Of a stretch of 64,000 bases of DNA, positions 1 through 21,382 are shown piece after piece; within the stretch, counting starts at the first letter, position 1; the number at the start of each line of letters is the position of its first letter. Both the position numbers and the translations under genes were made by a program. The notes under the pieces were generated by a model. It was not told where the DNA came from. It searched no databases and saw nothing but the letters and a program-made list of their open reading frames with translations. Origin of the DNA: Macrostomum lignano (Eukaryota); contig NIVC01002112.1 of the NCBI GenBank assembly GCA_002269645.1, forward strand, positions 1 through 64,000. The letters are read 5' to 3'.

Positions 1-252
1 GGCACACGACCTGACCCAATCCATGGCTGGCACACGACCCTGACCCAATCCCATGGCTGGCACACGACCCTGACCCAATCCCATGGCTGGCACACGACCC
101 TGACCCAATCCCATGGCTGGCACACGACCCTGACCAATCCCATGGCTGGCACCACGACCCTGACCCAATCCCATGGCTGGCACACGACCCTGACCCAATC
201 CCATGGCTGGCACACGACCCTGACCCAATCCCATTGGCTGGCACACGACCCT
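1..252. repeat. 30-bp tandem repeat (GGCACACGACCCTGACCCAATCCCATGGCT), intronic, truncated by window edge
   Basis: About 8 copies; several carry single-base indels, suggesting noisy consensus here. Confidence 0.95.
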
Positions 253-283
253 GATGAATTGCTCTGTTACTTCCAATTAACAG

Positions 284-550
284 TTTGAACAATGACGGAA
301 GCGTCGGAGGGGCCAACGGATATCTATCAGGTTGATGGCGGTCACGTGACGATTCTCTCGAGGCTGCCAGTTTTGCTGGCCCGTTCGCATTCAAGCTCTG
401 CATCTGGAGCTGTACGCGCAGCTTTGGCTGCTCAAAGTCCAAGCACAAGCTCATAAAAGCATCGTCACGGACTGTCACGATTGAAAGCCGCTGATAGTCA
501 AGCTTGATGGCAAGAATTCAAGCTGCTGATGAGGACGACGCTTGCTGCTG
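284..550 (+). CDS. Probable upstream exon of the giant gene (part of VWD domain), broken by apparent indels
   Basis: Acceptor ttaacAG at 282-283 and donor GTGAGT at 551. The 3' end reads ..RLLL in phase 0 into VNGKSVNVPY of the next exon, but no single frame is open. Confidence 0.5.
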
Positions 551-651
551 GTGAGTGGTTTAAACTCGCAAAAAAACTTAGTCTTTAGGAATGTAGAGTT
601 TTGAAAAATACCTCTAATAACTACGGGTACCCTGAATTATATTTCGGTCAG

Positions 652-1469
652 GTGAACGGAAAGTCCGTGAATGTGCCGTACAGCGAGCACAAAATTCGAG
701 CTTTCTACTCTGGCGAGGATCTCGTACTGGTGAGCAACAAGTGCGGATTCTGGGTGACCTTTGACGGCGAGTTTACGGCCACGTTCCGCCTGAGCTCCAA
801 CTTCTACAGAGGCCGAGTGTCCGGCCTTGCTGGCAACTGCGATGGCAACAAGGCCAACGACAACTTCGGCAATCTGAGCCACGCCTACAAGCTGTGGAAG
901 AGCAAAGGCTGGGTGAAGAACTGCAAAGGTCGGCCAAAGAAGTGCGGGTGCCATACTAAAAAAGAGAGGCGAGAGGCTGAGAGAGCTTGCAGAAAAGTAA
1001 TTGGACGCCATGGCTGTTCAAACACGGAGGTCCTGAGGCCATGCGTGATCGATTACTGCAGCACCAGGTATCGCCCAGACCTGCAGAGGAAAGTTCTGTG
1101 CGCCAATTTCTACCTGCACTCGAGACGATGCGCCCGTAATCACCGTCCAATCGCCTGGAGACACAAGAGCGGCTGCGGTGAGATGGGAATCTTTTTAGGC
1201 ATACGAGACTATAAGCGAGCTGAAATAGAGAAATCTCATTAACAATCTGGCGATTTTGATTTTCAGTCCTGAGTTGCGGTCGGCACCAACACTTTAGCCG
1301 CAAAGCGAACCCCTGCCCGAAGACTTGCGACAACCATTTCTTCGGCACCCCGAGGCGTTGCTACAAGCTTCCGAAAGCGGAGGGATGTCGCTGCAACAAA
1401 GGCTACGTATTGGATGGCACCAAGTGCGTGAAGCCAAAACACTGCGAGTGTCTGGCCAAGCTGTGCATC
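652..1469 (+). other. VWD (C-terminal half)-C8-TIL domain cassette of the giant protein
   Basis: VNGKSVNVPY..WVTFDG..RVSGLAGNCDGNKAND (VWD); C8-type Cys pattern ending AWRHKSGC; CGRHQHFSRKANPCPKTCDN..CRCNKGYVLDGTKCVKPKHC (TIL). Confidence 0.85.
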
Positions 1470-4400
1470 GACCGAGTGTCGCACCACAAGTGCCGCCACT
1501 GGAAGGCCCAAGGCAGATGTCGTAGGTACCCAGAAGTGATGGGCAGGTTCTGTCGGCTCACCTGCGGCATGTGCACGCCTCATTGTCGCAACCAGATAAG
1601 TACGCTCCTTTGCGAACAGATAAAGAAGAAGGGCAAATGTAGCAAACAGTTTTATCGCGTCATGTGCCAGGCCACCTGCCAACCGAATAAATGCCGTAAG
1701 TTCGTCGTCACCCAACTCGTTGCTACGCTCGTGTATTTAAATGGCGAACACGTGCTTAAACTGAGTCGCAAAACTTTCTATTCCAGGTTGCTCAGCTAAG
1801 CGACGCATTGTGTCAAAGTGCTCGGACAAATACAAGAACAAGGCTGTTACCACGCTGCGCTGGTTTCCAGACTCCAGAGGCCGGTGCAGAAAGAGCGTAC
1901 TGATACGCTACCATCCTTGCGGAGGTAAGCTGGAAGCGTATTTTCTGTCTGGAGCCAATTGTATTTCTACACATATTATGAGCTAATGTTTCACCGCTTT
2001 CTCGATTGCAGCTTGCCCGTACATAAGCAAAGTCCGTTGGTACAACTGCAACTATTGCAAAGGTGTGCAGATTGGCAAGCGACTTCTGCAGTACCGAGAG
2101 AAGCACGGAAAGAAGAGGTGTGTAAGAGTTCTACTTCTTATTAAGCGCAAGTGCCCTTGTCCGCCCATTGGCAAGAAGAAGAGCATCAGCTATACCGAGT
2201 GCAGGAATAATGTTGTCACGGTGCGAATCACCAAAACGTATAAGCCTACAAGACGTTGTTCTCGATGCGAGAGAAAAACGAGCACAAAAGTTGTGAGGAA
2301 AATCAGTAAGTTAGCTAGCGAGCGTCTTAAGCGCTTCTCCATTGAACTCGCGTTTGCATCGAAATTTTTACTCTAACAACAAAAATTTCAGACTGTACAG
2401 GCTTCTTCCACACTGGAAAGTGCACTCCAGGCCGCAAGTACTACTTTCGAATCACCTATAAGCGCTATGCTCACAAATGTCGCTGCCGGTCTCGCAAAGT
2501 GAGCCGGAAGAAAATTATGTGCCGCTGCAGCAAGCCAAAGTCTGTCTCTGTCTGCAAAGGCAGCTACTATCTGATCGTGACGACCCACTGGAAGCTGAAG
2601 AACGGCCGCTGCGTGCCTCATCAAACAAAAAGGACACGGAAAATCCGCTGCGATCGTAACCAACAAAATTTTGTGCGCTGTCATCGAAGCTCTTGCAAGG
2701 CTTTTAGGCATATCAGCTATTTTCACGTGCGCAACTGCAAGTGCCTGAAGTACTCCAAAGTAAAGCACATCGGAAAATGCTGTACGTATTTTCGTACGAG
2801 TTTTAGTATTTCAACTCGTCAAAATAGTTTCTACTTTTGAAATTAATAGAAAAGTTTATTACTGAATTTCAGGCTGTCCGCGGAGTTCCAGAGTTGTTGC
2901 TCGCATTAATCAATACTGGAAGAAGATCATTACTGTGACTTATACACTGATAAAATATCGCTGTATTAAAAAGATTATTATTCGCAAAATCCGAATCAAA
3001 TGCCCGAAAGGTGGTGTAATTGTTAGTTGCGACGGACGAAAAGGTCAGCGCGTCTTCACGAAGTTTTGGTATGAGAAAAAAGGAAACAACTGCATTAAGA
3101 GAACGTTGACGAAGAAGGTTACTGTCAGTAAGTGGAGACAGAATGACTGTCGATTAGCAATGGAAGCTTTATTGATGGTGCCGATCCATGTCGCTTATAA
3201 AACCGATTTAATTCCATTTTCAGAGTGCAGACGCGATGTGAAACGACTAGCGGGTCCATGCCGCCTGCTGTCGGGCAACGTTCGCTACCGGCGGGTTGAG
3301 TTCCGGTATTACAAGCGACGCTCAGGCAGCTGCTCCTGCGTCCCGGCAAAACGCGTCGCTCGCGAAATGTGCGGCTGCCGCGGCGGCAAACACACCAGGG
3401 TAACAAAGTGTCCCAAGGGTTGCACTACGAAGAACTGCGGTCGCCAGTGCACGTTCTCCAAGCTTTTCTATTTCTACAAAGCTTTTGGAAAGCGTTGCCG
3501 TGAGCATATCTTTAGGAGGCTTCACTTCCGATGCTGCTGCCGGCCCAACCGGCGCGTGAAAAATTGGTGTAGGAAGAATCAGTATCAGATGCGGCAAATT
3601 AGCTATTATCAACTGAAAGCGTACAGATGCCGTAAAGTATACAAAACAAGCAGTAAGCGGGTGCGCTGCAATCGAAAGCCGGAGACCAAAAGGATTCCCC
3701 ATCCGAAGAAGGGTTACTACTATCTGGCTACTTACAGCTGGTACGTCTCGAAGTGCAAGTGCCGGGTGAGAATTACCAAACGAGTCTGTAGAACGCACTG
3801 CCGATCGAAGAAAATAATTCGCTTTTGCGACAAAGTTCGCCGTGAAAAAGTCACTCGACACATAATCTGGCGTCTGCAAGGTTGCAACAAATGCATCTCT
3901 AAGGTGCACGATCGCAGAGTGCCTGTTCGCTGCAGCAAAACTGTTAAGAAGTGGAAGCACTGCAACAAGCGTACCGGCATTGTCACGCACTACAGACAGT
4001 GGTGGTATAGAAAAGACTGCCAATGTCTGAAGAGAACGACCACGAAGAAGCTTCGTTGCGGTAAGTATCGAATCATATTAATAATACATATTATGTTTAC
4101 ACTGCTGATCCATCGCCTCTCTGATCTCTTCTGAGCTGCCTGAACTCAGACCATGCTCATTCAAGCAAGGCAGGATGTTCAAATCCTATAACCTCAACTC
4201 AGATCATGCTCATTCAAGCAAAGCAGGATGTCCAAAGCCTATAACCTCAACTCAGACCATGCTCATTCAAGCAAAGCAGGATGTTCAAAGCCTATAACCT
4301 CAACTCAGACCATGCTCATTCAAGCAAAGCAGGATGTTCAAAGCCTATAACCTCAACTCAGACCATGCTCATTCAAGCAAGCAGGATGTCCAAAGCCTAT

Positions 4401-7400
4401 AACCTCAACTCAGACCATGCTCATTCAAGCAAAGCAGGATGTCCAAAGCCTATAACCTCAACTCAGACCATGCTCATTCAAGCAAAACAGGATGTCCAAA
4501 GCCTATAACCTCAACTCACACCATGCTCATTCAAGCAAAGCAGGATGTTCAAAGCCTATAACCTCAACTCACACCATGCTCATTCAAGCAAACAGGATGT
4601 CCAAAGCCCATAACCTCAACTCACACCATGCTCATTCATACAAAACAGGATGTCCAAAGCCAATAACGGGCCGCAGCTACTGCAATCCCAAACGAAATGC
4701 CTTCGAGAAGAAAATCACTTTTTGGATTCTGTCGAAGGGCCGCTGCCTGAAGCGAAGTCGTATAGAAAGAAAAAAGGTAAAATGCTCCTGCAAAGTTCAG
4801 AAAAGATCGGAATGCAAGCCTAAGAGCGGCGTTAAGGTTATCTACATCGGTGTAATGCGACCCAAGAATTGCAAATGCCGCCTAGTCTGGTCTGTGCACA
4901 ACAAGAGGCAGAGATGCAGTAAGTAAAATTGTGAAAAACTACTGCTAATATTGAGTTGAAATTTCGTGATTAGAAGGCAATTTACAAAATAACTTTAGAT
5001 TGCCACCGAGAAAACAAGCAAGCAGGCCGGCTGACCGTGCACTTCTGCGACAAGCGCAAGAACCGCAAGGGAACCGAAAAATTTCACTTCGTCCTGGTGC
5101 GCGGCAGGTGTGTTAAACGATCTAAGAAGACCTACAGAAACTTCCGCTGTCCTCGAGCCTACTATGAGAAGCGAAACTGCAACGAGGCCAGGCGCCTGCA
5201 GTTGGTGCTGAGGTACTACTCAGTGAAGAGGAACTGCAAGTGTGTCAAACTCGTACAGCGCAAACACGTCAAATGCGGTTGCAGTGGCAAAAAAGTTGAG
5301 CTTAAACGCTATTGTAAAAAGGTGCAAGGTGAAATAATAAAAGTCCGAATAACAAGAAGGTGGAGCAACCGACGCCACGTGTGCGTTACTAAGAAGAAGA
5401 CCACGAGTCACCGAGTTTGTAAGTTAATCAACTGTTGTTAAATATTCTAGTCTTCAAGCACATGAAGCATAGTCTAATCGTGGCATAAGACGACAGACTT
5501 TTGCAGCTTGACTAAAAAAACGCGCCAGGTGCTATTATCACAAAAAATAGGGAACTGTACAAAATAACACTTGTTTCTAAAAGCCACCATTACCCTTCGC
5601 AGTGTGTCGCAGCAAGAAGCGATATGTCAACAGCAAGTGCATCAAAAACAAATACTACATTGAGACAACGATCTACCACGAGCGCAAGGGTTGCAAGTGC
5701 ATTGAAAAGCGACTCAAACGAAAGAGAAATTGCCGTAAGTATTAGTACTTTCTTAATAAATCATAGTTAGTATAAATTCCGCTAAATTTTTTTACCTTGT
5801 TTTTTCTTTGCTAGACTGTAAGCGAATTATCCGACGCGGCAAGTGCCCACGACATGGCTATACACGTCGCGAAGTAGTTGAAGTTCGCGTGTGGGACATG
5901 AAGCATCGTCGGTGTCGCACCAAGCGCCAGTTCACCCGCCAGATCCGTTGCCGCTGCCCCAAAGGCTACAAGCGCCGATATTGCGAGGCCGGAAAGTGGG
6001 TGACGAAGTCAGTGCGGTTCATTCTAAAAAATACGCGCTGCTATAAAAAAGTCTCGAAGAGCAGCCGCAAGGTACACTGCCGTCGTGAGATAAGACACCG
6101 CTACGCCTCTTGTCAAGGCTGTCACCGATACATTTATACGCTGGAGCGGCGCCTGGATCCAAAGCGATGCGCCTGCTACTTTTCTGCGATTGAACGGCGG
6201 CGCTGTCCCTGCTGCTGCCCCAAAGGTTCCAACACGCGCCGTTGTGTTAAAGATGACGAATGGGAGAGAGTTTTCACGCACAATGCTCCTCTTACCGGAC
6301 GGCGCTGCGGTTGCCGAACATGGAAGACGCGCCGCCGCGAGAAAGTGTCCTGTTCGACCAGAAAAACTTACAAGTGGTTGAAATGTAATCGTCGCTCATG
6401 CCACAGTCACCAACAGGTAGTTAGCATAAATTTTCACATTTAAATGAGCAGTTATTGAATCCAGTCCTTACTTTTCCTTCAATAGGTAACATACTATAAA
6501 GCTAAGCGGTGCCGCTGTGAAAAGAGGCAACGCCTGACTGGCCGTAAGCGCGTCTGCTGTTGCCTGACGAAGCCACGGTTTAGCAAATTTTGCAAGAACA
6601 GCAGCGTCTACGAAAAGAAAATCTACTACCAACTGCACAACTGGCGCTGTAGACGGCGCGTTCGCAACCGTTTTCTGCATCGCTGGAGCTGCAAGCAAAA
6701 GCCAGTCATAAAAGTTGGAAGGTGATTGTTACTTAATCTTTTTTTTTATTTGTTTTAGCAGGCAAACAATTAAACTTATTCGCATATTCTGATTCCAATA
6801 CTCTACAGATGCAATAAAGGGAATTGCTATCAGTCCGTACACACTCTAATAAGTGTAGTTGATAAACCGCGCTGTCGTTGCAAGAACGTTGTGCGCAACC
6901 GACACAGGAGACGGTGCTGCTGCATTAAGAAGCCGCATAAAAACACGAAGTGCTTGAAAAACTGCTGGGTGACCACTTACACGAGTTATAAATTTGATGG
7001 ACGGCGTCGGGTATGCGTTGCTAAGATCAACCGCAGGACTAACTGCGTCAGTTGTCCAAGAAAAAGTCCTGCAGTTGGCGAGTGCAATAAAAAGACTTGT
7101 CGACGGCGCATCACGTATTTTACATATTCAATGGACAAATGTAAATGCAAGAGGCGCACTTACTATCGCTACAAAACCTGCTGCTGCCCAAAACCGTCCG
7201 TGTCGGGTCCAGTTTGTAAAAAGAATCGATATCGGGTGTGGTACTACAAAACTTGGAAGCTGGTTCATGGTCAATGCGTTTCTAAAGTCAAAGAGTCAAT
7301 ACGATCTGTTAAGTGTCGCAGAGGTGTCATAAGGGTGCTTCGCTGCAACAAAGCCACATGCCGTCAAGTTGTGAGGCGCGAGGTCGTGAGTTGAAGCGCT

Positions 7401-10400
7401 GCCGCTGTTTAAGCAGTTGGCGAGTGACACAGCGAACCTGCTGCTGCCGGCCAGCACACATTATCAACACCAGGTGCGAGCGAAACCGTTACCTCTATCG
7501 CTACAAAACCACCAGAAGACTCAATCAGAAGCGTGTGTGTGTCAGTCGCACAACAAAGCGCCTGTTGTACAAGGTTAGCAACTGTCGTACCACCGAAAAG
7601 AGAGGAGCCTGTAACAAGCGAACGCGACACTCTACTGTTTACATTACACACAGAAAGATTCACAAATGCAAATGCATTGTGTACCGCCGATCAACGCGCC
7701 GGGTGCTGTGCAGTAAGTTCTCATTTGCAATATTTTTACTAGACAGACAAAATCAAATGCAGTTTGTTTATTTTTACTAAATGTCATACTTTTAGGATGC
7801 AAAGGTTCGAGCGAAAAGAGAGGAAAGTGCAGCAAGACTACCTGCAAAATGGCTATTGTAAAAACGTGGTTCACCTCTCATGGTAAACTTGACAATTTCA
7901 AATGCAAGCGACACCAGAGAGTATTCTACCTGCGCTGCTGTTGCCACCCTCGACCGACATACAAGCTGTTCTGCAACAAGCGAACTGGCTCCACCATGAA
8001 GCGGCTCACGCGGACTGTGTTCGTCGCGTCAAGCAGAACATGCATAAAGCGGCATTCCACTGTTGTTGTGAAAAAACTTGGTGAGAAATCTTACCCGTTC
8101 ATTTCAGTATAAACGAAATGAATCCATTATGCAATGAAAACTGACTGGCCGTCATTACATTTTAGTGTGCCCAAAGAATTACTGTCGGTCAAGCAAGTGC
8201 AATAAGAAGACTGGCTACAAAGTGCGCTACTGTTACCATTTTACCAAAGTACGGGGTCTGTGCAGATGCAACAAACGCATTACTCAGAAAAAGATTATTT
8301 GCAGTGAGTAAATTTTTTATAAGCTATAATCTTTATAATTTTTCTTGTTTTATATGAAGTTGTATTTTGTAAATTTTACCGAAATCCAGGCTGTCAACAA
8401 AGCAAGCGCGTTAGCTTCTGTCAGGGCCACACAAAGAAGATATCAGTGATTACATATTGGAAGCTTTCAACTCGAGAAAACAGGTGCATTCGAATGGTGA
8501 AGCGCGTGACTAATCACCTAGTCTGTCCAAAGAACCATTGGGTGACACGTTCATGCAAAGGTTGCCAGGGAGTGAAGCATATTCATCACTACCTAATGCG
8601 ACGCTGCCATTGTCTTCGAAAAACACGTTCTTACCGCATTCGCTGTTGTTGTCCGAAGTCCCACCACAAGAAGCGTTGCCTTGGAAACAAGTGGCTTTTC
8701 GAGCAAGTGAAATATAGATTGCGACATGGTGTCTGTAAGAAGACTGTCTGCAAAAAACAAGTACCCGTTGCTTGTCCAAAAAAGAAAACCAAGCGTGGAC
8801 AGTGCAAGGGCTGTGTCAGGAAGCACTATACATGGTACTACCACGTTCGAGGCTGCAAATGTCTGTTGAAAAAGCGAAAAGTCCGAAAAAGTCTTTGTTG
8901 CTGCCCCAAGCCTCGCAAGTATGTGCAGTGCAAGGGTGGCGTGAAGCAGAAGGTATGCTTGTCCTGGAGCCTGTGTTCCGGCAGCTGTTTAAAGAAGCGA
9001 CACGTCACTACCTCTAAAGTGATTTGTCCTTGCAGTACAATAAAACGGTTCGCTTGCAACATGAAGTCACTCAAGCAGAAGGCAGAAATCACCAGCTATT
9101 CACTTCAAGGCTGTAAATGTGTCAAGAAGCTTCAAGTAAAGTACGTGCATTGCAAGTGTCGGCCTTCAACAAAAAAGTTCGAGAAGTGCGGTAAAAAATC
9201 CAAGCGACGAGTGTTTCGCATTGTATTCCAGCTCTATCATCAGAATGGCAAAGTTGTTTGCAAACCAAAGCGCTATCTGTTGTACTGGGAGCCGTGCCGG
9301 TGCAAGGCGTCACAGCGAACCAAAACTTGCGCTTCTAATGGGCGAGTTTTCGTAACTGTAATCAAGAAATGGAATTTGTGCAAGCGCCACGGCCGGAGGG
9401 AGTGTGTACTGAAGACTTCATTGTTGCAAGAAGCGGTAGAATGTCAAGGAAAGAGTGTCAAATGGTCTAACTGCAAAAACTTCCGCACGACTCGTACTGT
9501 TATTAGACAGAAGCCTGTGCTTTGCCACTGCAAAAGCTTTGTTAAGAAAAAAGTATTTGCTTGCAGTAAGTATGCCAGGGTTGATGACTAATTTCTTAAT
9601 GCACCGGTTTTCTCCACATATTTAAACATTTGCTCAAATATTTCAGATTGTAACAAGAAGTCATACAAGAAACGAGTCTGCCATCACAAAACCGGTATCA
9701 TTGCTGTAATCCAGAAATCGTTTCACTCTTGCTGCGGTGCCACCAGCTGCAGTTCCAAGAGCCAAACTTCGTATTATCCGGTGAAATGTTCAAAGCGTGA
9801 GCGTGTCTCCCGACTATCTCGGAAATGCGGTATTATGCATCAGCACGGTTGGTACACCAAGTATCTGCTGACATGGAAGGTACGACAGGACTGTAAGTGC
9901 GTCAGTAAGCAAAAGAAAGAGATGAAGCTGTGCCGTTGCAAGAAAAATTCAAGCCGCACTAAATGTAGCCGCAGCGGTCGCTACTTCGTGACAGTGCGCT
10001 ACACATACAAACGCAAGGGCTCCACCTGCCACTTGACTCGAACTGAACAGCGACGGCCTGTTAAATGCAAGGGCAAGAAAGTGCAAATCAAATTTTATGG
10101 ATGTTCAAAGTGCCGGCGGCGTGTTTCTCTCAGTCAGTGCTACGTGCATTCTTGCCGTATTCATCACTATAGAAAATCAGGTCTGCAGCGCTGCTGCACT
10201 CCAAAGCCCAAGACGCGTCACTATTGCGATGCCCGAAAGGGTCGCCGTGTATGGGAGACGACAACATACTCTCTGGTCCCGAGCAAGCCCCTCTTGAAGG
10301 ATCGCGATGGTCGAGTGCGGGTTCCACAGCTTAAAGTCGTATCCAGGAAGAGCTATCGATACGTGAATGTCCGATGTCCCAGAGGGGAGAAGAAAGAACA

Positions 10401-13400
10401 TTGTGATCGACGCACCGGGCTTTGGAGAAAAGTGGTAACTACCTGGCACATAGTCGGTTGCAAATGCGTTAAGAGGCTGAAGCGCTATAGTGGAAGATGT
10501 CGTGAGTTTTTTATATTATTGTTCCTTCTACCTATTCAGTGTTATCTGCTGGAAAACTAATGCAACTTTTAAAACATTTTCGTTTTATCAACCAGGCTGC
10601 CAGCCTCCGAAAGTTCGATGGGGCAAGTGCCGCAATCGGTATATGGTAAAAACAGTGATATACTTCACACTGAAGAATCGAGAGTGCATCCGGCAGGTAA
10701 GGAGGCACAGATATCTGTGCGCATGTCTGAAGGATCGCAAGTTTACAGTGTGCGATGGACGTGGTCGCTGGAAGACTTGTCAGATCAGCTACCAACTGCA
10801 GCGACAAAAGCAGCGTTGTTTAAAACTGAAGCAGTGCCGCAGTCGGCCGCACACTTGCTCTGCGCCAAGAGAAAAACGCGGTCCGTGCATCCGCTGCCGC
10901 CGAATAATCACGCGATACGTGTGGCACCTTAACAAGAAGAAGTGCAAATGTGAAAGGCGTGTACAGACCAGGCGGGCTGACTGCGACTGTCACAAGAAGA
11001 ATAGTTCCAGGACTGAATGCAAGCGCGGCGCATTTATAACTACAATTTACCGATACAAACTGATTGGGGAGCGATGCGTCCGATCCGTCTCCAAAGTGGC
11101 GAAACCTGTATGTAAGTAATAAATCGGCTTCTGCCTACTTACATATTTTCTGCTCGTATTCCTGACCGGTGAATTGCGCGTTCATTGGAAATTCAATAAC
11201 CACCAACTCCATAGATTGCGATGGGCGACGTAGAAGCAGGATTATTCGTGGCAGCTGCGTCACAGCCCGAGGAAGTAGCCATCGGGGCTATCAGAAGCTC
11301 ATAACTGAATGGAAAGTAAACCGAAAGTGTAGGTGCGTGCGTCAGCATATCGTGCGCTGGGTTCCATGCGTGTGCAAACTAATCAGCAAGTACAGGACGC
11401 GCCGCTTTTCAAAGTGTATCGGTGGCTCAACTGTTCGCCATACAACTGTCTTCTACAAGCTGGTTGGCTACAAATGTATCAGAAAAGTGCAGACACGACA
11501 CAAGAAAATTAGTAAGTTGATGATGACAGTTGTGGCAAATTAAAACACTCAGTTGCTTTCGCATTCAGCCTAGATTGTTTAGATGCAAAATTGATGCAAA
11601 TTATACGGTTAATTTTCAGAATGCTCGAGATCAAAGACGGTTACTGGAAAATGCAAGCTTAACAAATATGGCGACAGGTATTCTGAGATCCGTCTGTTGC
11701 GCCTGGTTAGCAACGGACGATGCGGCTGCGTTTGGAAGCAAAAAAGCCTGAAATACCGAATCTGTCGGTGCCGAAAGGCGAAACGAGTTAATCGGTGTGT
11801 GAACAATAACACCCGGCGCACTGATCTCTTTACATTCCACCCGGTGCGAGGAGCACGGATCTGCAGACGCCGATTGAAACGAAGCGACAAAAAGATACGC
11901 TGCAGAGGAACCTATAGTAAAAAAACCAAATGTCACCGCTGTGGATTCATCGTGCACCACTACAATTCTAAACCTATCAATTGCAAGTGCGTTACTCGAC
12001 GGGTGCGCGTGGAGAAGCTGAGGTGCTGTTGTCAGAAAAGTGTCACTAAGCGATCATGCGACACTAGTCGGCATATGTGGGTGACTGTTACTATTAGCTA
12101 CAAGCTGCGTCGTTACAGGTGCATCCCCAAGCGAACAGTTTACACTAAACTAGTGCGGTGTGGTAGAAAAAATCCCGTCTATAAATTTTCACGTGTCAAA
12201 AAGGTTTCCGCAAAATTTTCAAAACCATCTACTATGCTGTCGGATGCGGATGCAAGTCGAAGACGACTGTGTACAAGCAGCGCTGTGCTTGTTCTTCGGT
12301 ACGAAAATATGTCCGCGGGAAGTGTGTTGGCTGGTTCGCTCTTGACATCTGGCTGGCTTATAAGCTCAAGCCAACCGGAAAGAATATACCAGGAACTAAC
12401 AAGCCTCAGAAAAAATGCGTGAAATATGTGGCCCATAAGAAAAAGCGCCGCTGTAAATGCCCAAAAGGCTTCAGGAAGCGCATTTGCAAGAGGCATAATC
12501 TGGAAATTTTCGAGACCGTCACTTATCATCTGCGTGGAAACAGTTGCGAGCGCAAGCGTAGCGTTCGCAATAATCGACTACCGTGTTCTACAAAACTTCG
12601 ATGGGTTCGCACACAGGTAATGCCTCGTGCCTGCAGTAGTCGAAATAAATACGTTCAAGTTATTAAGAAAATCTACGTCTATGCTAAGAACTGCAAGTGC
12701 CTCTATGTGACTCGAAAACACACGCGTATATGTGACTGCGCTAAGAGGCATGGTCGAAAAAAGCTGGTTAAATGCGTGGGCAATAACAAAGTGGTGACTT
12801 ACACAGAGTGGTGGGTGCCCAAGGGCTACGGTTGCAAAAAGATGTCTCATAAATCGGTGCGACTTGTGCGCTGCAAGGGCGCGAAGATTGTGCCCGGAAA
12901 TTGCAGTCGGAAAGGTTTCCGCATCTATTATTTGTACCAGCGGCGGGCGAAAAAATGCCAATGTATTTGGGTACTCGTGAAGCGCGTGACTGTTCCATGC
13001 AGGTAAGAAAAACATTAGAAAATGTATCTTTGATATGAGTGGCTGTCATAGTTTTATTTTTCTAGTTGCTTAATTACCGAATTCACCAATTCAGGTGCCG
13101 CAAAACGGTCGTCACAAAGAAGTGCATATCCAATGAAGTTGTGACAGTTACAAAGAAGTGGCTTCTTGTTGGCAAGAAGCTGAAGGCCCACTGCAAGCTT
13201 GTAAAACGTACTCACAAAAGAAAGGTGCCGTGCAAAGTTGGTCGATATGTAAAACAATCGCGGTGCAACTTCAAAGGGGTCAAGCACATTGAAACGACCG
13301 AAATCAGCCTCAATAACTGCCTCTGTCGTAAGCGTGTGACCCGACGCAGCTGCCGCTGTCACTGCCGAAAGATACCTGATCGACGCTTCTGTAAAAATGG

Positions 13401-16400
13401 TCGCATTTTGGTCACAGTGAAAACAGCATCTAAGCTTCGTAACTGTGCGTGCTATAAAGATAGCAAAGTTTCCCGCAAAGCTGTGCGCTGTAAGAAGTCT
13501 ACTAAAACTCGTGGTCCGTGCAGGAGAGGACGTAATGGAGACAAGTACCGCAAGCTGACGCACATTCAATGGACAGTCCGGAACTGCAAATGCCGAAGCG
13601 TTCGCAAAGTTACTCATCAACTCTGCGGCTGTGACAAGCGTCGTCAAGTTAAGAACAGCTGTCTGGCTGGCTATATAAAGGTCACGAAAATCACTGAACG
13701 ACGACTGGTACGTGGTCGTTGTCGACGAATTCTCGTTGGCAAGCGACGCCAACGCTTGAGCTGTGGTCAGGTGAAAGTGAAAAAGGTTTGCAACAAGAAG
13801 TCTGGACAGCTTAACGTTTTTGTGACGAGGCCATACGTTAAGCACTGCAGATGCTTTAAAAAAGTAACGCGGCACATACGCCGTTGTGGTAAGTATTGCG
13901 TTTAAATTTTTAGCTTAGTTCGTGCAAATCATGGCGTCAAACGTATCTTATTTTTAAGTAACAATGCACACTCAAACAAAATACTTTCAGGTTGTCATCA
14001 CGGTAGCAAACTAGTTTCGACTGCACCGTGCAACAAGAAATCGTGTCGCCAGAGGCTGCTTTTTAAGAAACAGGTTCTCAGTGGCGAAAAATGCATTTGG
14101 AAGAGTTATCATCGGCATCGCGTGTGTTGCTGTAAGGGCTACAGACGCACTGTTAAATGCGACCGCAAACGAGGGTACGTCATCACAACTATCACCAAGC
14201 GAGTTCTCAAACAGTGGAAGTGTATCAAGAAGGTTACTAAGAGCAGCAGGAAAATTAGTATGTGCTGTTGTTTTTAGCTCTTAATACTGGAAATGTTACC
14301 TTAAGTATTTGACATGCAATATAAAATGTTTCATGATATTTTCAGAGTGCAAGCGTCATAATACGGTTTCCAAACAAAAGCTTCCTGGCGGTGTGCTGAA
14401 GGTTACCCGTTGCTCGGTTAAGCGGCAGGATTGCAAGTGCGTGAAAAGCTGCAAAACTGTGTTCTTGAGATACAGTGAGTCCCGTTTAAAATTTTATTTT
14501 CATTTTTCTTCCGCTCAGGCAAGGTGGCGAATGAACATCGTTTTTTCTAACATTAACATTACAGAATGCAAGAAGCCAGTGCAAAGAGTTCTTTGCAAGT
14601 GTTCTCGTGGCCGTTGTCGTAAGGAGCGCTACATCACCGTGTGGAGACTATCGAATGGTAGATGCCTCAAGCAGACACGTCGCGTGGATAAACCGATCCT
14701 TTGCAAACCGAAAAAAATGACTCGTAGTTGCTGCAGTAAACCAACAAAGTACGGATTTTATTTGGTTGAGACGACCGTCTCCTGGTATCAAAAGGCATGT
14801 CGCTGTCATAAAAGAGTTCAAACTCGTTCGGTTGTCTGCCGCTGTTTGAAGCCACACAAAAAGAAGATCTGCCACCGGGGACATATAGTTACATTCCATT
14901 ATTCTTACCGATTAAGTCGTGGTCGCTGTGTGCGGGACGTTAAGCGTCAATCACAGGCGGTTCGATGCGACACAACTTGGCGGCTGTCACACAGTACAGC
15001 AGGAAAACCAAAATACTATAAGGTATACAAGCGCTTTGTCCGATCTGGATGCAAATGCATACGGCAAACCAAACGAGTGCTGTGCTACTCTGATTGTCGT
15101 CGGTGCACTTTGTCATACAGGTGCGAAAATGGCAATCAAGTTGCGGCCATTCGAAACTGTTGGCGTTTGGTTGGATGTCGTTGCGTCAGCTATAGAACTG
15201 TCTCTAGAAAGCGTGTGTCATGTCCTAAATCGACCATACAACGAAATTGCAAGCGCTGTAATCGCACAGTAATAATCAAGCAATACAGCGTTCGCAAGTG
15301 TAAGTGCATTATGAAGAAGCAAGTGAAGAAGAGCAAATGCTGTTGCAACAAGGCAACAACGACCCGAGTTTGTATTCGCGGTGCGATACGAATCAGACGG
15401 ATTACTCACACGCTAAGAAATGGTCGCTGTTACTCAAAAACAAAGGACTCTTTCAGGCGTGTGAACTGCACACGCCGCGTGCTCAGGGCTATCCAGGGAA
15501 GGTGCAAAGGAGGAAAACAACGGTACATCGTGCACTACTGGGTAAAGATTGGCTGCCGTTGTGTGCGCCGTGTCCGCTCTGAATTCCGAAAGTGCGCTTG
15601 TGCCCACAAAGCTGTCGATCTTTTCTTGGTAGTTGACCTGTACGGAAAAGACAGGCGTGGCTACAAGAAACGAATAGTCAGCTTCCTAAAGACCGTTTCC
15701 ACCTACTTTTTGCACACCTCTGCAAGTGTTCACATTACTATGGTTTCCTACAACTGGAATGTACACGTTCACAAATTGAAGCATTTGAAAAATCTACCTA
15801 TCAAGGCATTTACCAACACAAGAACCGATTTGTGCGGGGCTCTTAAGGAAGTCAATAGGCGTCTACACGCTAAGTCCCGACCGGGTGTAGAAAAGATTGT
15901 AGTAATCATTACCTGCGGCAAACATAGCAAGCAGCACAAGACAGTCGCACTGGCCGACAAGATTAAGCGCAAAGCCAGCGTTTTCGTTGTTGGCTTCCGT
16001 CCGATTCCCAAATCCGGTCTATACGTCAAGTGGCTGGCTTCAAAACCAATCAAAATGCATTACATGGAACTTGGAATTCGCCGCAAGTAGGTTAACCATT
16101 TCTTTTTGATGCAAATTTTCTGTATTTGAATTAAGTTTATGACACTTGTTTCAATGTTAAGATGCTTCAACTCATACATTCTGTAGGTATCACTTCTCCG
16201 CCACGCGCCTGTTTGAGAGAATCTGCAAGAAAGCTTGTGCCAAGCCGGTCGTTAAGCATTCCGCTTGTCACAAACACAACTGCAGGAGAGTGTATACACG
16301 CACCACATTCTATTTGGATCGGCGTAGAAAGAAATGCGTGCGCAGATCCAAAAGCTGGTGGAAGCTGTGCTGCTGCATTCACAGAGACAGCGTTGAAAAG

Positions 16401-19264
16401 AAGTGTTACAAAAACAGACTGTACCGAGTTGTCACCTCATACCGATTCAAGAAGCACGCCTGTCATCGAAGCGTGCGCCGGTATGACATTTCCGCTCAAG
16501 TGCATGCAGCCTGTCGGCCACGCTCCAAGCTTCACCGAGGACCGTGTCGCAAAGATGGCTGGAGGAAAGACACGATAGTAACTCGGCATGTTGCACAGTG
16601 CCGCTGTAAGGTTGGCCGCCGACACCAGCTCATACGCTGCCGTTGTCCTAAGCAGCACGTTGTCAACACCTGCGTTCGGGGAAATCACCAGCAGCGCTGC
16701 CACTATACTTACACTCTCAAACCGACTGGGTGCACCAAAAACCGCAGATGCCGCACTTCTCGCGTAACGTGCAAGACTCGAAAAATAGTCAGGGGTAAAT
16801 GCAATCGTTCGAGCTGCAAGAGAAGTATGGGAAGCATATGGTACACTGTGCGAAACTGCAAATGCAAGCGTCATTATAAAGTGTGGAAGGAAACTTGCTG
16901 TAAGTTCAATTTTCTACCAATGTAGTTAATTTTCTACTCAATCAAACAGTTACAAACCCTAAGTGTTATGTTATTTCAGGTTGCAAGCGGCAACTTCAGA
17001 AATACCGCTACTGCGACAAACGTTCGCAGCAGCATGTTGAAGTCCATTCTTGGCTTGAATTCCACAAACGCAGTTGTCGCCGCGTGTCTCGCAAAATTTA
17101 CCGACCAGTCCGCTGTCCTTCACCTCGAACGAAAAAATCCAAATGTGCTGCCAGACAGAATGGATTCTATCGAAAGTGGGTCGAGTGCTATTGGAAGAAG
17201 AGAAATTGTGTCTGCATCAAGTACACAAAGTCGCGCTATGAGCTTTGCAGATGTAGGCGCGGTTACGCAACCAAGAAGTGCCGCTCCGGCTCGTGGGTTT
17301 ACATTCACCATTATTGGCAGAAGTCTGGAAATAAGTGCATTGCACGCAGCAAGATCACCTCAAGAGTTCGTGTAACGTGCAGCTCCAAGCGTCATAGTGT
17401 TACTGGCCCGTGTAATATCGTTAAGGGAAATAAAAAGTACGCGCGAGTCGTGCAGACATGGAAGCGACGCGTCGGTTGCAGCTGCAAAACCGTTTCCAAT
17501 TCTTTCTTGAAGCTGTGCGCCTGTCAGAAGCCATACAAACGCTACAGTTGTCTTAGAAATAACCGCTTAGTGATAACTGAGTATCGCTTCTTTGTAAGTG
17601 GTAATAGTTGCAAGCTTCGAAAGTTTACAAGCTACAGACTTATACGTTGTCCGAAGGCGCGCACAAAGGTGTCAAAATGTACAGGCAAGACTCAAGCAGT
17701 TATTGTTGTCATTCACAAGCCTATAAAATGTAAATGCGTATCGAAGATCTACAGACGCGTGGTGCAATGCAAGTCCAAGTGTAGAGACCTGCTACCCACT
17801 GGAATATGCAGAAAGTGGGCCGCTTCTAACAAGATTCAATTGTGCGACAAATACCCGTATTTCGCCAAGCGTCTTTGCGCGAGGACCTGCCATCGTTGCT
17901 ATGGTAAGCACTAACTTTGCTTTATAGAACACGAATATTGATATTTTCAACTGTGATTCAAAACCAATTCTCCCACAGGCTGCCCCAAAACGCGGCTCAT
18001 TTATGCCAAAAATTTCTGCCTCAGCAAGCAGCGGCACTTCCGACGCTCGTTCATTTTGGCTCAGCGCACCTCATTCGACGTTTGCATGAGCAGCTGTCAG
18101 AAAAACAGCAAATGCCGGGCATTCGACTATGATCATTCAACGCGAAAGTGTCTCCTTCTGCGAATCAATCGCAGAGGTCTCCTCCTGCGGTTCCCGTCGC
18201 TGAAGTTGCGCAAGACGCGAGACTGTATTTTGTTTGAGCGGATCTGTCCTACTAAATGTCCCTTCCGCCGCATCCTGAAGCAATACAAGTGCAGCTGCAT
18301 CAAATTAGGCAAGCAGCGCGTATGCTACAGGACAGCAGCGGTGGCTACGTGGAAGCGGAATCGCAGCGGTAGCTGCCAAAGGCGGGTGCACAAACTGCGA
18401 GTGCCATGTCGCAAATGCGAGGACAGACGAGAATTCTGCAAGAAGTCGAAGTGTTCCAGGCACCTCGTACGTCATCTGTGCAATTACACTTGCGGTGTTT
18501 GCAAGCGTCAACCGAGAGGCTACCACTGGCGCAGCCGCTGCTCCAAGTCCGGCTGGCAGAAGGACATTAGAGTTCAGGTCTACTACGATAAAAAACTACG
18601 TCTGTGGCGCGTCTCTGTCAGAATCAAAAACCTGCGCTGCGTCCGTTGCCAAGTCGGCTCTTACCAGTTGATCGGACCGTGCAAAAATGGCCAACGCAAA
18701 ATTACAAAGATCGTCGCCCGCTTTGTCAATGGCCGATGTCGCATCAGCTCTCATGCTAAGACTTATAGCTGCAAGAACTGCGGCTTAGTCACCAGAAAGC
18801 TGATTAGCAAGTGCTATCGTCACGGCAAGAAATGGATCCGGCAGGTAGTCACACTGTACACAATCCGTGTGAAGGGTCACTGCATTGTTCGCCGAAGTCT
18901 CGCCGTTTTCTCTTGCTCGCCGAAATGTCCGCGCGATCGGTCCACCGTGTCTCAGTGCAAGTGCGGCAAGCGAATCCGCTGCTTCATGTATTACGTCACG
19001 TATCCCGGATCGAACGTTTGCGTGCCTAAACGATACACCTCCAGCGAGAAGTGCGCCTCAACTCAGAGTGAGTCAAAGCTTTCACTAGCTGTCATTCTTA
19101 ACTAAATCTTTCCTAAATACCTTCTGGCAAATCCCACGAATCCCGCACGTCTTCCAGAATGCAAAGACAAAATCCGCCCTGTTGACTGCCTGTTCGTGAA
19201 GAAGAGCAACATGTGCCGCTCAATGCGCAGTCTGTGCGCCAGGACTTGCGGCTACTGCAAATGA
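652..19264 (+). CDS. Giant Lys/Arg/Cys-rich secreted-type protein (VWD-C8-TIL, ShK-like x5, long Cys-hairpin repeat region, degenerate VWA, PAN/Apple); 5' end outside window
   Basis: Exons 652-1177, 1267-1695, 1787-1924, 2012-2305, 2392-2781, 2873-3127, 3224-4060, 4649-4918, 4999-5418, 5603-5734, 5815-6416, 6486-6721, 6809-7712, 7796-8080, 8166-8303, 8390-9565, 9647-10501, 10596-11111, 11215-11511, 11620-13002, 13095-13888, 13991-14257, 14346-14474, 14565-16086, 16187-16899, 16980-17903, 17979-19067, 19158-19264(TGA). All introns are GT-AG and phase-compatible. Exons sum to 15,628 nt, or 5,210 codons after restoring single missing bases near 7392 and 12191. Confidence 0.9.
4140..4665 (+). repeat. 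53-bp intronic tandem repeat that copies the downstream intron/exon junction
   Basis: Unit CCATGCTCATTCAAGCAAAGCAG|GATGTCCAAAGCCTATAACCTCAACTCAGA, about 9-10 copies; the last copy is the true acceptor at 4648/4649. Confidence 0.9.
15600..16086 (+). other. von Willebrand factor A domain with degenerate MIDAS
   Basis: VDLFLVVDLYGK..HITMVSY..TRTDLCGALKEV..RPGVEKIVVIITCG..VFVVGF..WLAS follows the VWA strand/helix order. Confidence 0.8.
17979..18250 (+). other. PAN/Apple domain
   Basis: SFDVCMSSCQKNSKCRAFDYDHSTRKCLLL..LFERIC matches the PAN CxxxC..CxxFxY..C pattern. Confidence 0.8.
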
Positions 19265-19419: not shown

Positions 19420-20420
19420 CAGTCAGTCAGTCAGTCAGTCAGTCAGTCAGTCAGTCAGTCAGTCAGTCAGTCAGTCAGTCAGTCAGTCAGTCAGTCAGTC
19501 AGTCAGTCAGTCAGTCAGTCAGTCAGTCAGTCAGTCAGTCAGTCAGTCAGTCAGTCAGTCAGTCAGTCAGTCAGTCAGTCAGTCAGTCAGTCAGTCAGTC
19601 AGTCAGTCAGTCAGTCAGTCAGTCAGTCAGTCAGTCAGTCAGTCAGTCAGTCAGTCAGTCAGTCAGTCAGTCAGTCAGTCAGTCAGTCAGTCAGTCAGTC
19701 AGTCAGTCAGTCAGTCAGTCAGTCAGTCAGTCAGTCAGTCAGTCAGTCAGTCAGTCAGTCAGTCAGTCAGTCAGTCAGTCAGTCAGTCAGTCAGTCAGTC
19801 AGTCAGTCAGTCAGTCAGTCAGTCAGTCAGTCAGTCAGTCAGTCAGTCAGTCAGTCAGTCAGTCAGTCAGTCAGTCAGTCAGTCAGTCAGTCAGTCAGTC
19901 AGTCAGTCAGTCAGTCAGTCAGTCAGTCAGTCAGTCAGTCAGTCAGTCAGTCAGTCAGTCAGTCAGTCAGTCAGTCAGTCAGTCAGTCAGTCAGTCAGTC
20001 AGTCAGTCAGTCAGTCAGTCAGTCAGTCAGTCAGTCAGTCAGTCAGTCAGTCAGTCAGTCAGTCAGTCAGTCAGTCAGTCAGTCAGTCAGTCAGTCAGTC
20101 AGTCAGTCAGTCAGTCAGTCAGTCAGTCAGTCAGTCAGTCAGTCAGTCAGTCAGTCAGTCAGTCAGTCAGGCAGTCAAGTCAGTCAGTCAGTCAGTCAGT
20201 CAGTCAGTCAGTCAAAGTCAGTCAGTTTCAGTTTTCAGTCAGTTTTCAGTCAGTCAAAAAGTTTCAGTCAGTCAGTCAGTCAGTCAGTCAGTCAGTCAGT
20301 CAGTCAGTCAGTCAGTCAGTCAGTCAGTCAGTCAGTCAGTCAGTCAGTCAGTCAGTCAGTCAGTCAGTCAGTCAGTCAGTCAGTCAGTCAGTCAGTCAGT
20401 TCAGTCAGTCAAGTCATCAG
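19420..20420. repeat. (CAGT)n microsatellite, about 1 kb
   Basis: Pure tetranucleotide array, degenerating after about 20170. Confidence 0.98.
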
Positions 20421-20865
20421 TTTCACAGTCAGTGGTCAAGTGTTTTGCCCTCGATCCGGGGCGCCACATGAGAAGCAGTCAGAGACAGAGGAGAGAGCAA
20501 AGTGGAAGCATGAGAGTTGCACTGCTAGCTGAGTGCAGGGACGGCCCAGTGGGCATCAGGCACGCAGCTGATTCATCCCCTGCTCCACCCTTCCGTCTCT
20601 CCGTCTCTTTTTCTCTCTTCTGAATTTCTCTGTCCCCAAAAGCTACCCCTGCCTCAGCTGTGCCTGTCATAACCAATGGCAACGCAAACCGTCTCTCTAC
20701 CGTTGACTTGCTTCCCTCTTCTCACTGCCTCTCCCCCTGCCTAAAAGCTTACCTGCAGCAGCAGAGAGAGGCTTTGAAATAAAGGAAGGAAGGCAGAGAA
20801 ATTAATTTTTTTCTTTTCAAGCTCTCCAGACTTGACTAGCAGCTGGAACAGACAGTTACTGCAGC

Positions 20866-21382
20866 ATGGCCGACTTCGCCAAGGATAAATCATATGGAGT
20901 TGTTGATCCGCACAATGTCCAAGAGCTCACGAATCACGTAAGCTGGGGCTTGTCAGGGGACGTCTTTACGAACCTGAAGTTGGCAAAAACACAAAGCTTT
21001 AAGGAACACCATGTTTGAACCGGATTCAAGCCAACAGTATTTAGCGTATTGCTTTTTTGGGCACTGTCGAAAATTAAAGCGACAGTCTGCGTGGATCGGC
21101 CTGTTCGTTCAAGCTACTAAATTAAGATTAGCTTAAGCGAGTATTACTAACGAACTGTCTATGGTTTTTTAATATCTGTAGTCCGGGATATGCTTACTGA
21201 TCCGCTACCCTCCTCGCCACCTGCAGCTGCAGGCCATGCTGCAGGGCATGACCGACAATTTCGGCCACACCAGCGACCGCATCACCGGCCGAATCGACGA
21301 AATGGGCCGGCGTATTGACGAACTCGAGCGCAGCGTCGCCGACCTGATGACCCAGGCGGGCGTGGAGGACTTTCGATCGTAA
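20866..21382 (+). CDS. HSBP1: Heat shock factor-binding protein 1, two exons (20866-20937, 21227-21382)
   Basis: MADFAKDKSYGVVDPHNVQELTNH|LQAMLQGMTDNFGHTSDRITGRIDEMGRRIDELERSVADLMTQAGVE aligns with the HSBP1 family motif DP..VQDLT..Q..L..M.D.F..SD.I.GRID.M..RID.LE...ADLMTQAGVE; phase-0 GT-AG intron. Confidence 0.92.

What the first reader, a model, noticed from the sequence alone, without database searches (positions are those of the whole stretch)
284..19264. Giant (>5,200 aa) polycationic, disulfide-dense gel- or adhesive-like protein with an unfamiliar domain architecture
Seen: one spliced gene encoding VWD-C8-TIL, 2 ShK-like, about 4,000 aa of Cys-hairpin repeats, degenerate VWA, more repeats, ShK, PAN/Apple, ShK, repeats and a terminal ShK. 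In a sampled stretch about 27% of residues are K/R and about 12% Cys, and acidic residues are scarce. No Ser/Thr/Pro mucin tract is present. Known: VWD-C8-TIL cassettes drive polymerisation of gel-forming mucins and vWF, and occur in the Macrostomum adhesive proteins Mlig-ap1 (K/R-rich) and Mlig-ap2. Inference: a secreted polymer that binds polyanions (mucus glycans, substrate or microbial surfaces) through charge rather than O-glycans, for example a glue, rhabdite, cocoon or defence component. I do not recognise this architecture as a described protein.
Basis: partly seen in the sequence, partly recalled or inferred. Interest (0 to 1): 0.9.

Follow-up and report, generated by a model that had tools for sequence, protein, structure and literature searches.

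The report
Giant polycationic flatworm cysteine-repeat protein
The window holds most of an unannotated Macrostomum lignano gene for a secreted protein of more than 5,200 residues, built mainly from about 90 copies of an undescribed 44-residue disulfide-stapled beta module, and it belongs to an uncharacterised family of giant proteins found so far only in flatworms, parasites included.

Summary
Window 589-19264 (+) encodes a spliced gene of 28 exons and 27 GT-AG introns (25 of them 69-108 nt). My model has 5,229 codons and no stop. It is 28.4% K+R, 10.0% Cys and 3.4% D+E, net charge about +1,300, with no Ser/Thr/Pro tract.

Domain order: VWD (C-terminal half only)-C8-TIL, two ShK-like, about 80 Cys units, VWA without a MIDAS motif, 11 units, ShK-PAN-ShK, units, terminal ShK.

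Corrections:
- Coding evidence starts at 589, not 284.
- The signal peptide and the N-terminal half of the VWD are not in the window.
- Two 1-nt frame breaks (near 7387 and 12185) must be bridged.

The organism is Macrostomum lignano. The gene is not Mlig-ap1, ap2 or ap3. It is an unannotated paralogue in a family seen only in flatworms. The exhaustive search returned 21 cluster representatives; every one carrying an organism name is a flatworm (five carry none) and all are annotated as hypothetical. The family shares the same N- and C-terminal modules.

The repeat unit has no Pfam match. AlphaFold models it confidently (pLDDT 95) as a three-stranded beta module, and Foldseek finds no PDB counterpart.

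The most likely role is a disulfide-linked extracellular polymer that binds polyanions. The tissue and the actual function are unknown.

The parts
589..19264 (+). Gene body present in the window: 28 exons, 27 GT-AG introns, 5,229 codons, stop codon at 19262-19264. The 5' end is missing.
649..867 (+). C-terminal half of a VWD domain (Pfam profile positions 78-150 of 156)
943..1176 (+). C8 domain
   Evidence: Pfam 23.4 bits; aligned within the D assemblies of FCGBP and VWF
1177..1451 (+). TIL domain (spans intron 1, 1178-1266)
1446..1694 (+). Two ShK-like domains. ShK1 is strong; ShK2 matches only Pfam's Crisp model.
1692..15601 (+). First array, about 80 Cys units of about 44 residues, with alternating A and B subtypes (introns included in the range)
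7385..7392 (+). Apparent 1-nt frame break inside a B unit (gtcgtg^ag)
12183..12189 (+). Apparent 1-nt frame break in an A/T homopolymer run inside a B unit
15602..16086 (+). VWA domain lacking the MIDAS serines (DLYGK in place of D-x-S-x-S)
16236..17773 (+). Second array, 11 Cys units
17765..18511 (+). ShK-like (weak), PAN/Apple (strong) and ShK-like (weak) module
   Evidence: It aligns to the C-terminal modules of the flatworm relatives.
18674..19054 (+). Last Cys units (2 at E<0.01, plus weaker ones)
19158..19261 (+). Terminal ShK domain on its own exon
284..588 (+).

Best explanation
This is most of a Macrostomum lignano gene for a secreted modular protein of about 620 kDa. Its 5' end lies outside the window. 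It belongs to an uncharacterised family of giant proteins known so far only from flatworms.

About 77% of the chain is an array of about 90 copies of a module of about 44 residues. Each module has 4-5 conserved cysteines and is predicted to be a short strand plus a long beta-hairpin. Two subtypes, A and B, alternate, so the structural period is about 88 residues.

The array is punctuated by a VWD-C8-TIL D assembly with two ShK domains near the N-terminus, a VWA without a metal site in the middle, a ShK-PAN-ShK module near the C-terminus and a terminal ShK.

Inferred mechanism:
- The modules form long, disulfide-stapled, protease-resistant rods.
- The D assembly links chains into multimers in the secretory pathway, as in VWF, mucins and FCGBP.
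- In this paralogue the solvent-exposed loop and strand positions are filled with Lys and Arg (net charge about +1,300).
- The secreted polymer would therefore bind and cross-link polyanions such as sulphated or acidic glycans, glycocalyx or nucleic acids.

Shown here: the gene structure, composition, domain order, repeat unit, family membership and organism. Inferred: secretion, multimerisation, rod shape and polyanion binding. Unknown: the tissue and the physiological role.
For: - Gene model and composition.
- Repeat unit and A/B alternation.
- Exon structure: 23 of 27 introns are phase 1, and most sit at the same point of the unit (C|xC). This is typical of modules spread by exon duplication.
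- Structure: AlphaFold gives pLDDT 95.2 and pTM 0.65 for an AB pair, and pLDDT 91.4 for ABAB, with the same three-strand pattern in every unit.
- D assembly: aligns with FCGBP and VWF structures.
- Family: exhaustive phmmer finds 21 representatives. Every one that carries an organism name is a flatworm; five carry none (three MetaClust entries, one Logan contig, one JGI metagenome contig). Lengths reach 5,275 residues.
- Shared modules: the N-terminal D assembly plus ShK pair and the C-terminal ShK-PAN-ShK module align between this protein and members from M. lignano, cestodes, trematodes and a monogenean. The alignments run to the last residue of several of those proteins.
- Charge: cysteine and hydrophobic columns are conserved across the family. 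The K/R excess sits in columns where the parasite proteins carry D/E.
- Secretion: complete relatives start with signal-peptide-like sequences, by inspection.
- Organism: CDK20 at 60089-62354 is 100% identical to M. lignano BOX15_Mlig023521g1.
Against: - No transcript, signal peptide or N-terminal half of the VWD could be shown for this copy.
- Two frame breaks need explaining.
- No protein set holds this gene.
- There is only one D assembly and no CTCK domain, so the mucin/VWF mode of polymerisation is an analogy.
Disulfide pairing, rod geometry and the claim that K/R lie on the surface are inferred from sequence columns and secondary structure only.
- Relatives in parasites are only mildly basic, so charge cannot be the family's core function.
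Confidence: 0.55

Rival explanations
1. This copy is a young, 5'-truncated or decaying pseudogene, a homeologue of a functional giant gene in the partly duplicated M. lignano genome.
For: - Two 1-nt frame breaks fall inside otherwise canonical units.
- The signal peptide and the N-terminal half of the VWD are absent, and a 30-nt tandem repeat lies directly upstream.
- The gene is absent from the protein sets.
- A second copy of the neighbourhood exists at 94-99% identity.
Against: - There are no stop codons in 5,229 codons, although 5.7% of all single substitutions would create one. P(no stop) is 0.012 at only 0.5% neutral divergence.
- All 27 introns keep GT-AG.
- One break lies in an A/T homopolymer run and the other at a possible g/gg run. 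Such sites are typical of long-read assembly errors.
- The missing 5' end may simply lie beyond position 1 of the window.
- The corresponding Mlig_3_7 contig would end inside the gene, which would explain the missing annotation.
Confidence: 0.2
2. It is a cohesive component of the temporary adhesive of the duo-gland organs, acting like Mlig-ap1 or ap3 by charge interaction with the glycocalyx.
For: It is from the same species, is very K/R-rich and has VWD-C8-TIL, as Mlig-ap1 does (PMC6410801).
Against: - The published adhesive-organ transcripts were all assigned to ap1 and ap2 (PMC6410801).
- The ap1 and ap3 K/R regions are cysteine-free low-complexity sequence, and ap1 also carries C-type lectin and EGF arrays, none of which occur here (PMC9229212).
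- The family is conserved in endoparasites that have no duo-gland organs.
Confidence: 0.07
3. It is a polyprotein precursor that is cut into about 90 cationic, disulfide-stabilised beta peptides resembling defensins, serving defence.
For: The units are small, cationic, three-stranded and disulfide-bonded. There are 380 dibasic sites.
Against: - Neighbouring units share boundary cysteines: the last Cys of an A unit is the first Cys of the following B unit.
- There is no conserved cleavage motif at unit borders.
- The AB pair is predicted with a pTM of 0.65, that is, with a defined relative orientation of the two units.
- D-assembly, VWA and PAN modules and mildly charged parasite relatives fit a structural polymer better.
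Confidence: 0.05
4. The family is a conserved flatworm extracellular-matrix or organ-specific filament (for example basement membrane, protonephridial filter or reproductive tract), and this paralogue keeps that role. The charge would then be incidental.
For: - The same N- and C-terminal modules align across Macrostomorpha, Monogenea, Cestoda and Trematoda.
- The domains are of matrix type (VWA, PAN, VWD).
- An unrelated lead: a 'ShKT-domain protein' is a protonephridial marker in S. mansoni (PMC11349301). Its relation to this family was not tested.
Against: - M. lignano has several diverged paralogues (28-47% identity), which suggests specialisation.
- No Schistosoma protein was among the hits.
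- There are no expression data.
Confidence: 0.13

Closest known systems
Uncharacterised giant flatworm proteins: E. granulosus EUB62272.1 ('collagen alpha-3(VI) chain', 5,275 aa), Sparganum proliferum BHF74423.1, Cichlidogyrus KAL3317405.1, M. lignano PAA50356.1 and PAA78532.1, Calicophoron daubneyi 'ShKT domain-containing protein'
   Same: They share the same 44-residue Cys unit in long arrays, the D assembly followed by two ShK domains, a mid-chain VWA and the C-terminal ShK-PAN-ShK-units module. Cys content is 7.5-10%.
   Different: - Identity is only 22-47% (22-34% in full-module alignments; up to 45-47% in short blocks of the TIL-ShK region).
- The relatives are much less basic: K+R 15-26% and D+E 8-13%, against 28.4% and 3.4% here.
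- At least one relative (P0006) keeps a MIDAS motif in its VWA.
- One M. lignano paralogue has about 31 units upstream of the VWD.
- None has a described function.
D assemblies of VWF, gel-forming mucins and FCGBP
   Same: The VWD-C8-TIL cassette aligns over residues 20-259 (E 1e-54 to FCGBP, 8rde). In those proteins it is the module that drives disulfide multimerisation.
   Different: There is a single cassette, and it lacks its N-terminal half in the window. There is no Ser/Thr/Pro tract, no CTCK domain and no VWC domain. The bulk of the chain is an unrelated Cys module.
Mlig-ap1 and the ap3 proteins of flatworm temporary adhesion (PMC6410801, PMC9229212)
   Same: Same species (ap1). They are giant, secreted and strongly cationic, and ap1 carries VWD-C8-TIL. 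For those proteins, electrostatic binding that heparin blocks is shown experimentally.
   Different: The ap1 and ap3 K/R regions are cysteine-free low-complexity repeats. ap1 also has a C-type lectin domain and 17 EGF modules. There is no ShK, PAN or VWA, and no sequence relationship was found.
[quoted passage not shown]
   Same: They are large flatworm secreted proteins with D assemblies and long repetitive cores.
   Different: [quoted passage not shown] Their authors regard them as probably related to mucins on account of the repetitive central region. They have no ShK-PAN module and no array of the unit described here.

Membership tests
Flatworm giant Cys-hairpin-repeat proteins (unnamed family) | Long arrays of the ~44-residue unit with Cys at HMM columns 1, 3, 13, 33 and 46 and a hydrophobic second strand | tested here: met
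   93 units here and 3-41 units in each relative of at least 600 residues, all found with the same HMM. Column profiles are conserved.
Flatworm giant Cys-hairpin-repeat proteins (unnamed family) | VWD-C8-TIL followed directly by two ShK-like domains | tested here: met
   blastp gives 33-45% identity to the corresponding regions of P0018, P0026, P0011 and P0002. The VWD N-terminal half is missing from the window.
Flatworm giant Cys-hairpin-repeat proteins (unnamed family) | C-terminal ShK-PAN-ShK-units module at the end of the protein | tested here: met
   Aligns to the last residues of P0003, P0024, P0007 and P0009.
Flatworm giant Cys-hairpin-repeat proteins (unnamed family) | N-terminal signal peptide | tested here: inconclusive
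   Present by inspection in P0018 and P0026. The corresponding exons are not in the window.
Gel-forming mucins / VWF | Several D assemblies (D1-D2-D'D3) | tested here: not met
   One cassette only.
Gel-forming mucins / VWF | Ser/Thr/Pro-rich O-glycosylated tract | tested here: not met
   S+T+P is 15% overall and at most 24% in any 100 residues.
Gel-forming mucins / VWF | C-terminal cystine knot (CTCK) for dimerisation | tested here: not met
   Pfam finds only ShK at the C-terminus.
Mlig-ap1 / ap3 adhesive proteins | Cysteine-free low-complexity K/R (GRK) repeat regions | tested here: not met
   The K/R residues here sit inside structured Cys units, and Cys is about 10% throughout. Definition taken from PMC6410801 and PMC9229212.
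Mlig-ap1 / ap3 adhesive proteins | C-type lectin domain and EGF array | tested here: not met
   No such Pfam hits.
Mlig-ap1 / ap3 adhesive proteins | Expression in adhesive gland cells and presence in footprints | not testable with these tools
   No expression data were available.
Known small disulfide beta modules (TSR, Fn1, VWC, EGF, defensin-like) | Sequence-profile or fold match of the repeat unit | tested here: not met
   No consistent Pfam hit for 24 AB units at E<=10. Foldseek against the PDB gives no hit at E<=0.001; the best are E 0.18 with TM 0.34 and E 0.15 with TM 0.14.

The most novel reading that the evidence does not exclude
The ~44-residue unit is a new protein domain and fold confined to flatworms. 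It builds a family of the phylum's largest secreted proteins, parasite members included. This M. lignano paralogue would be an extreme natural polycation: a stiff, disulfide-stapled rod carrying about 1,300 net positive charges, used as an electrostatic cross-linker in a secreted material.
Probability: 0.4. Interest if true: 0.75.

Novelty: new variant of a known kind. Interest (0 to 1): 0.6.

Why it matters
- A confidently modelled repeat module with no Pfam family and no PDB counterpart would be a new entry for domain and fold catalogues.
- The module defines a family of giant proteins found so far only in flatworms. Members occur in Echinococcus, Paragonimus, Dicrocoelium and monogeneans, where they are unnamed or mis-named as collagen.
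- A protein family restricted to flatworms, extracellular and very large is of interest for parasite biology.
- The M. lignano paralogue is a structured polycation, unlike the disordered K/R tracts of the known flatworm glue proteins. That makes it a distinct design for charge-based biological materials.
- M. lignano is a tractable model for in situ hybridisation, RNAi and transgenesis, so the function can be tested directly.

Tried and rejected
- Treating 284-588 as the missing N-terminal half of the VWD. A frame-corrected conceptual translation did not extend the Pfam match. tblastn with the VWD N-terminal halves of P0018, P0026 and P0001 found nothing upstream of about 650.
- A profile of AB units in the word-indexed protein search found nothing, which I put down to the limits of its prefilter.
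- The first splice model contained errors. It retained two in-frame introns (3128-3223 and 14475-14564). It used wrong acceptors at 2401 and 16950. It also proposed two implausibly short introns (47 and 41 nt), which I now read as frame breaks.
- I tested for covariation between the optional extra cysteines (the second Cys of CCC, and the extra Cys in B units) as a sign of a disulfide. There was no association.
I therefore could not reach the Mlig_3_7 copy of the giant gene.
- Literature searches on the accession numbers, on Macrostomum with ShK, on rhabdite chemistry and on Echinococcus 'collagen alpha-3' gave nothing relevant.
- Rfam and tRNA scans of the window found nothing.
Full report
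**What is in the sequence**

The + strand from 589 to 19264 is filled with stop-free stretches rich in Cys, Lys and Arg. A splice-aware dynamic-programming model, corrected by hand, gives 28 exons and 27 GT-AG introns. Twenty-five of the introns are 69-108 nt long. One intron of 588 nt holds a 53-nt minisatellite.

The model has 5,229 codons and no stop, against 189 and 233 stops in the other two frames. It ends at a TGA at 19262-19264. The composition is K+R 28.4%, Cys 10.0% (525 cysteines) and D+E 3.4%, with a net charge of about +1,306 and a mass of about 621 kDa. The highest S+T+P content in any 100 residues is 24%, and there are 13 N-x-S/T sites.

**Domains**

Pfam was run on separate segments.

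| Segment | Pfam result |
|---|---|
| VWD | Profile positions 78-150 only |
| C8 | 23.4 bits (cut-off 23.7) |
| TIL | 36.4 bits |
| ShK1 | 34.7 bits |
| ShK2 | Matches only the related Crisp model, 18.7 bits |
| VWA | 30.9 bits |
| ShK3 | 13.5 bits (weak) |
| PAN_1 | 40.4 bits |
| ShK4 | 13.9 bits (weak) |
| ShK5 (terminal) | 24.9 bits |

Residues 20-259 align without a break through VWD-C8-TIL of FCGBP (E 1e-54) and VWF chains in the PDB, so the D assembly is real. The VWA has DLYGK where a cestode relative has the MIDAS motif DESVS, so 'degenerate VWA' is a fair description.

**The repeat**

An HMM iterated on the protein itself converges on a 46-column unit. It finds 93 copies at E<0.01, covering 4,019 residues. 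One of the 93 is a spurious match over ShK2, which is why I speak of about 90 copies elsewhere. Cysteine autocorrelation peaks at 42-44 and 86-89 residues.

Two subtypes alternate:
- **A:** C-x-C-P-K ... C ... hairpin ... G-x-C ... V-x-C
- **B:** C-P-K ... G-x-C ... hairpin ... C-x-C ...

An AB pair has eight near-invariant cysteines.

Twenty-three of the 27 introns are phase 1, and most cut at the same point of the unit, C|xC. This is the signature of a module spread by exon duplication.

Twenty-four AB pairs give no consistent Pfam hit even at E<=10.

AlphaFold2 was run with an alignment made only of paralogous units from this gene.
- An AB pair is modelled at pLDDT 95.2 and pTM 0.65.
- An ABAB stretch is modelled at pLDDT 91.4 and pTM 0.54.
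- Every unit is a short strand followed by a hairpin of two 12-residue strands.

Foldseek against the PDB gives no match at E<=0.001 for either model. The best hits are generic beta meanders, with TM 0.34 and 0.14. I could not read the coordinates. Disulfide pairing and shape are therefore inferred.

**Weak points of the gene model**

1. *The 5' end.* Homology to relatives begins near 650. Neither the N-terminal half of the VWD nor a signal peptide is found anywhere in the window. Positions 1-254 are a 30-nt tandem repeat. The first exons probably lie upstream of the window.
2. *Two frame breaks.* At about 7387 and about 12185 the frame shifts by one base inside units that are otherwise canonical. 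Reading these places as introns of 47 and 41 nt gives poor splice sites and broken units, whereas adding one base restores perfect B units. One site lies in an A/T homopolymer run and the other at a possible g/gg run.

Since 5.7% of all single substitutions would create a stop, the absence of any stop limits neutral decay to well under 0.5%. Assembly error and a very young pseudogene both remain possible.

**Organism and locus**

The CDK20 gene at 60089-62354 (- strand) is 100% identical to M. lignano BOX15_Mlig023521g1. The Mlig_3_7 contig carrying that gene (NIVC01001046.1) is collinear with the window at 94-99% identity, with indels. The window is therefore another copy or another assembly. 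By my arithmetic that contig would end about 6 kb into the 3' part of the giant gene. This may explain why no protein set contains the gene.

**Relatives**

The word-indexed search with the N-terminal 697 residues found only an M. lignano fragment and a Calicophoron daubneyi 'ShKT domain-containing protein'. In the Calicophoron locus, repeat units continue beyond the annotated gene end.

An exhaustive phmmer search with exon 16 against 1.84 billion cluster representatives found 21 proteins at E<=0.001. Every one that carries an organism name is a flatworm:
- M. lignano paralogues
- the cestodes Sparganum (3,690 aa), Echinococcus granulosus (5,275 aa, named 'collagen alpha-3(VI) chain') and Dibothriocephalus
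- the monogeneans Cichlidogyrus (3,665 aa) and Protopolystoma
- the trematodes Dicrocoelium, Paragonimus and Echinostoma

The N-terminal D assembly with its ShK pair and the C-terminal ShK-PAN-ShK-units module align between this protein and those relatives. The alignments run to the last residue of several of them.

Two relatives with complete N-termini begin with signal-peptide-like sequences, by inspection.

Cysteine content and the hydrophobic strand columns are conserved throughout the family. Charge is not: parasite members have K+R 15-19% and D+E 9-13%, other M. lignano paralogues have 21-26% and about 8%, and this gene is the extreme. The surplus K/R lie in loop, turn and third-strand columns where the parasite proteins carry D/E.

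**Comparison with known proteins**

- *Mlig-ap1, ap2 and ap3.* This gene is none of them. ap1 has cysteine-free K/R low-complexity regions, a C-type lectin domain, a D assembly and 17 EGF modules. ap3 is GRK low-complexity sequence (PMC6410801, PMC9229212).
- *Gel-forming mucins.* It is not one: it has one D assembly, no Ser/Thr/Pro tract and no CTCK domain.
- *Planarian mucin-like matrix proteins (PMC6453901).* These have a different architecture.
- *Literature.* I found no paper on any family member.
- *An untested lead.* A 'ShKT-domain protein' marks protonephridia in S. mansoni (PMC11349301). No Schistosoma protein was among my hits.

**Interpretation**

The best reading is a secreted, disulfide-stapled, rod-like polymer. 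Its chains would be joined through the D assembly, and in this paralogue it would act as a structured polycation that binds polyanions.

Rival readings are:
- a young pseudogene copy
- a role in duo-gland adhesion
- a polyprotein of cationic peptides
- a conserved matrix or organ filament in which the charge is incidental

The tissue and the function remain open, and they are directly testable in M. lignano.

Noticed in passing
window 4139-4667: A 53-nt minisatellite (10 copies, 95% matches) fills most of the 588-nt intron 7. Each copy repeats an AG-ending acceptor-like stretch (aagcag|gatgtccaaagcc) and the first codons of the following exon (GCPKPIT...), so the array offers a series of potential alternative acceptors.
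   Followed up: partly
window 19420-20421: A (CAGT)n microsatellite of about 249 copies lies 160 nt downstream of the stop codon of the giant gene. Similar 4-nt arrays (read as SVCL / DRQT in translation) interrupt other genes at 28.4-29.8 kb, 37.0-37.5 kb and 40.3-41.1 kb.
   Followed up: no
window 1-254: A 30-nt tandem repeat (8.5 copies, 96% matches) sits at the window start, directly upstream of the first supported exon. It is probably intronic.
   Followed up: partly
window 20867-21381 (+): A two-exon HSBP1-like gene (heat shock factor binding protein 1) lies 1.6 kb downstream of the giant gene. Two in-frame acceptors, 6 nt apart, are possible for exon 2.
   Followed up: partly
window 32220-33560 (-): A single-exon ORF of 446 residues has the look of a rhodopsin-type GPCR and contains a run of 23 glutamines. 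This exact product is not on record in the gene collection.
   Followed up: partly
window 26174-43358 (+): Exons of a leucine-rich-repeat plus long coiled-coil protein are spread over about 17 kb and interrupted by microsatellites. The GPCR gene lies inside this stretch on the opposite strand.
   Followed up: no
window 55667-58553 (+): Several exons look like a cytochrome P450, ending with the haem-binding FGxGxRxCxG region at about 58.4 kb.
   Followed up: no
window 60089-62354 (-); L002: CDK20 is 100% identical in protein to M. lignano BOX15_Mlig023521g1. However, the Mlig_3_7 contig NIVC01001046.1 is only 94-99% identical in DNA and carries a 6.4-kb insertion relative to the window. The window is a different copy or assembly.
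   Followed up: yes
window 21691-21887 and 52673-52867: A dispersed repeat of about 200 nt is present twice on the same strand at 91% identity. Its nature was not determined, and it has no Rfam or tRNA match.
   Followed up: partly
L001 46778-55944 (Calicophoron daubneyi): Repeat-unit matches continue for 10 kb beyond the annotated end of the trematode gene, to the end of the fetched locus. The 989-residue database protein is therefore a fragment of a much larger gene.
   Followed up: partly
P0006 (Sparganum proliferum) residues 3555-3689: The cestode family member carries a lysine methyltransferase (Methyltransf_16) match at its C-terminus. This is probably a gene-model fusion with a neighbouring gene.
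   Followed up: no
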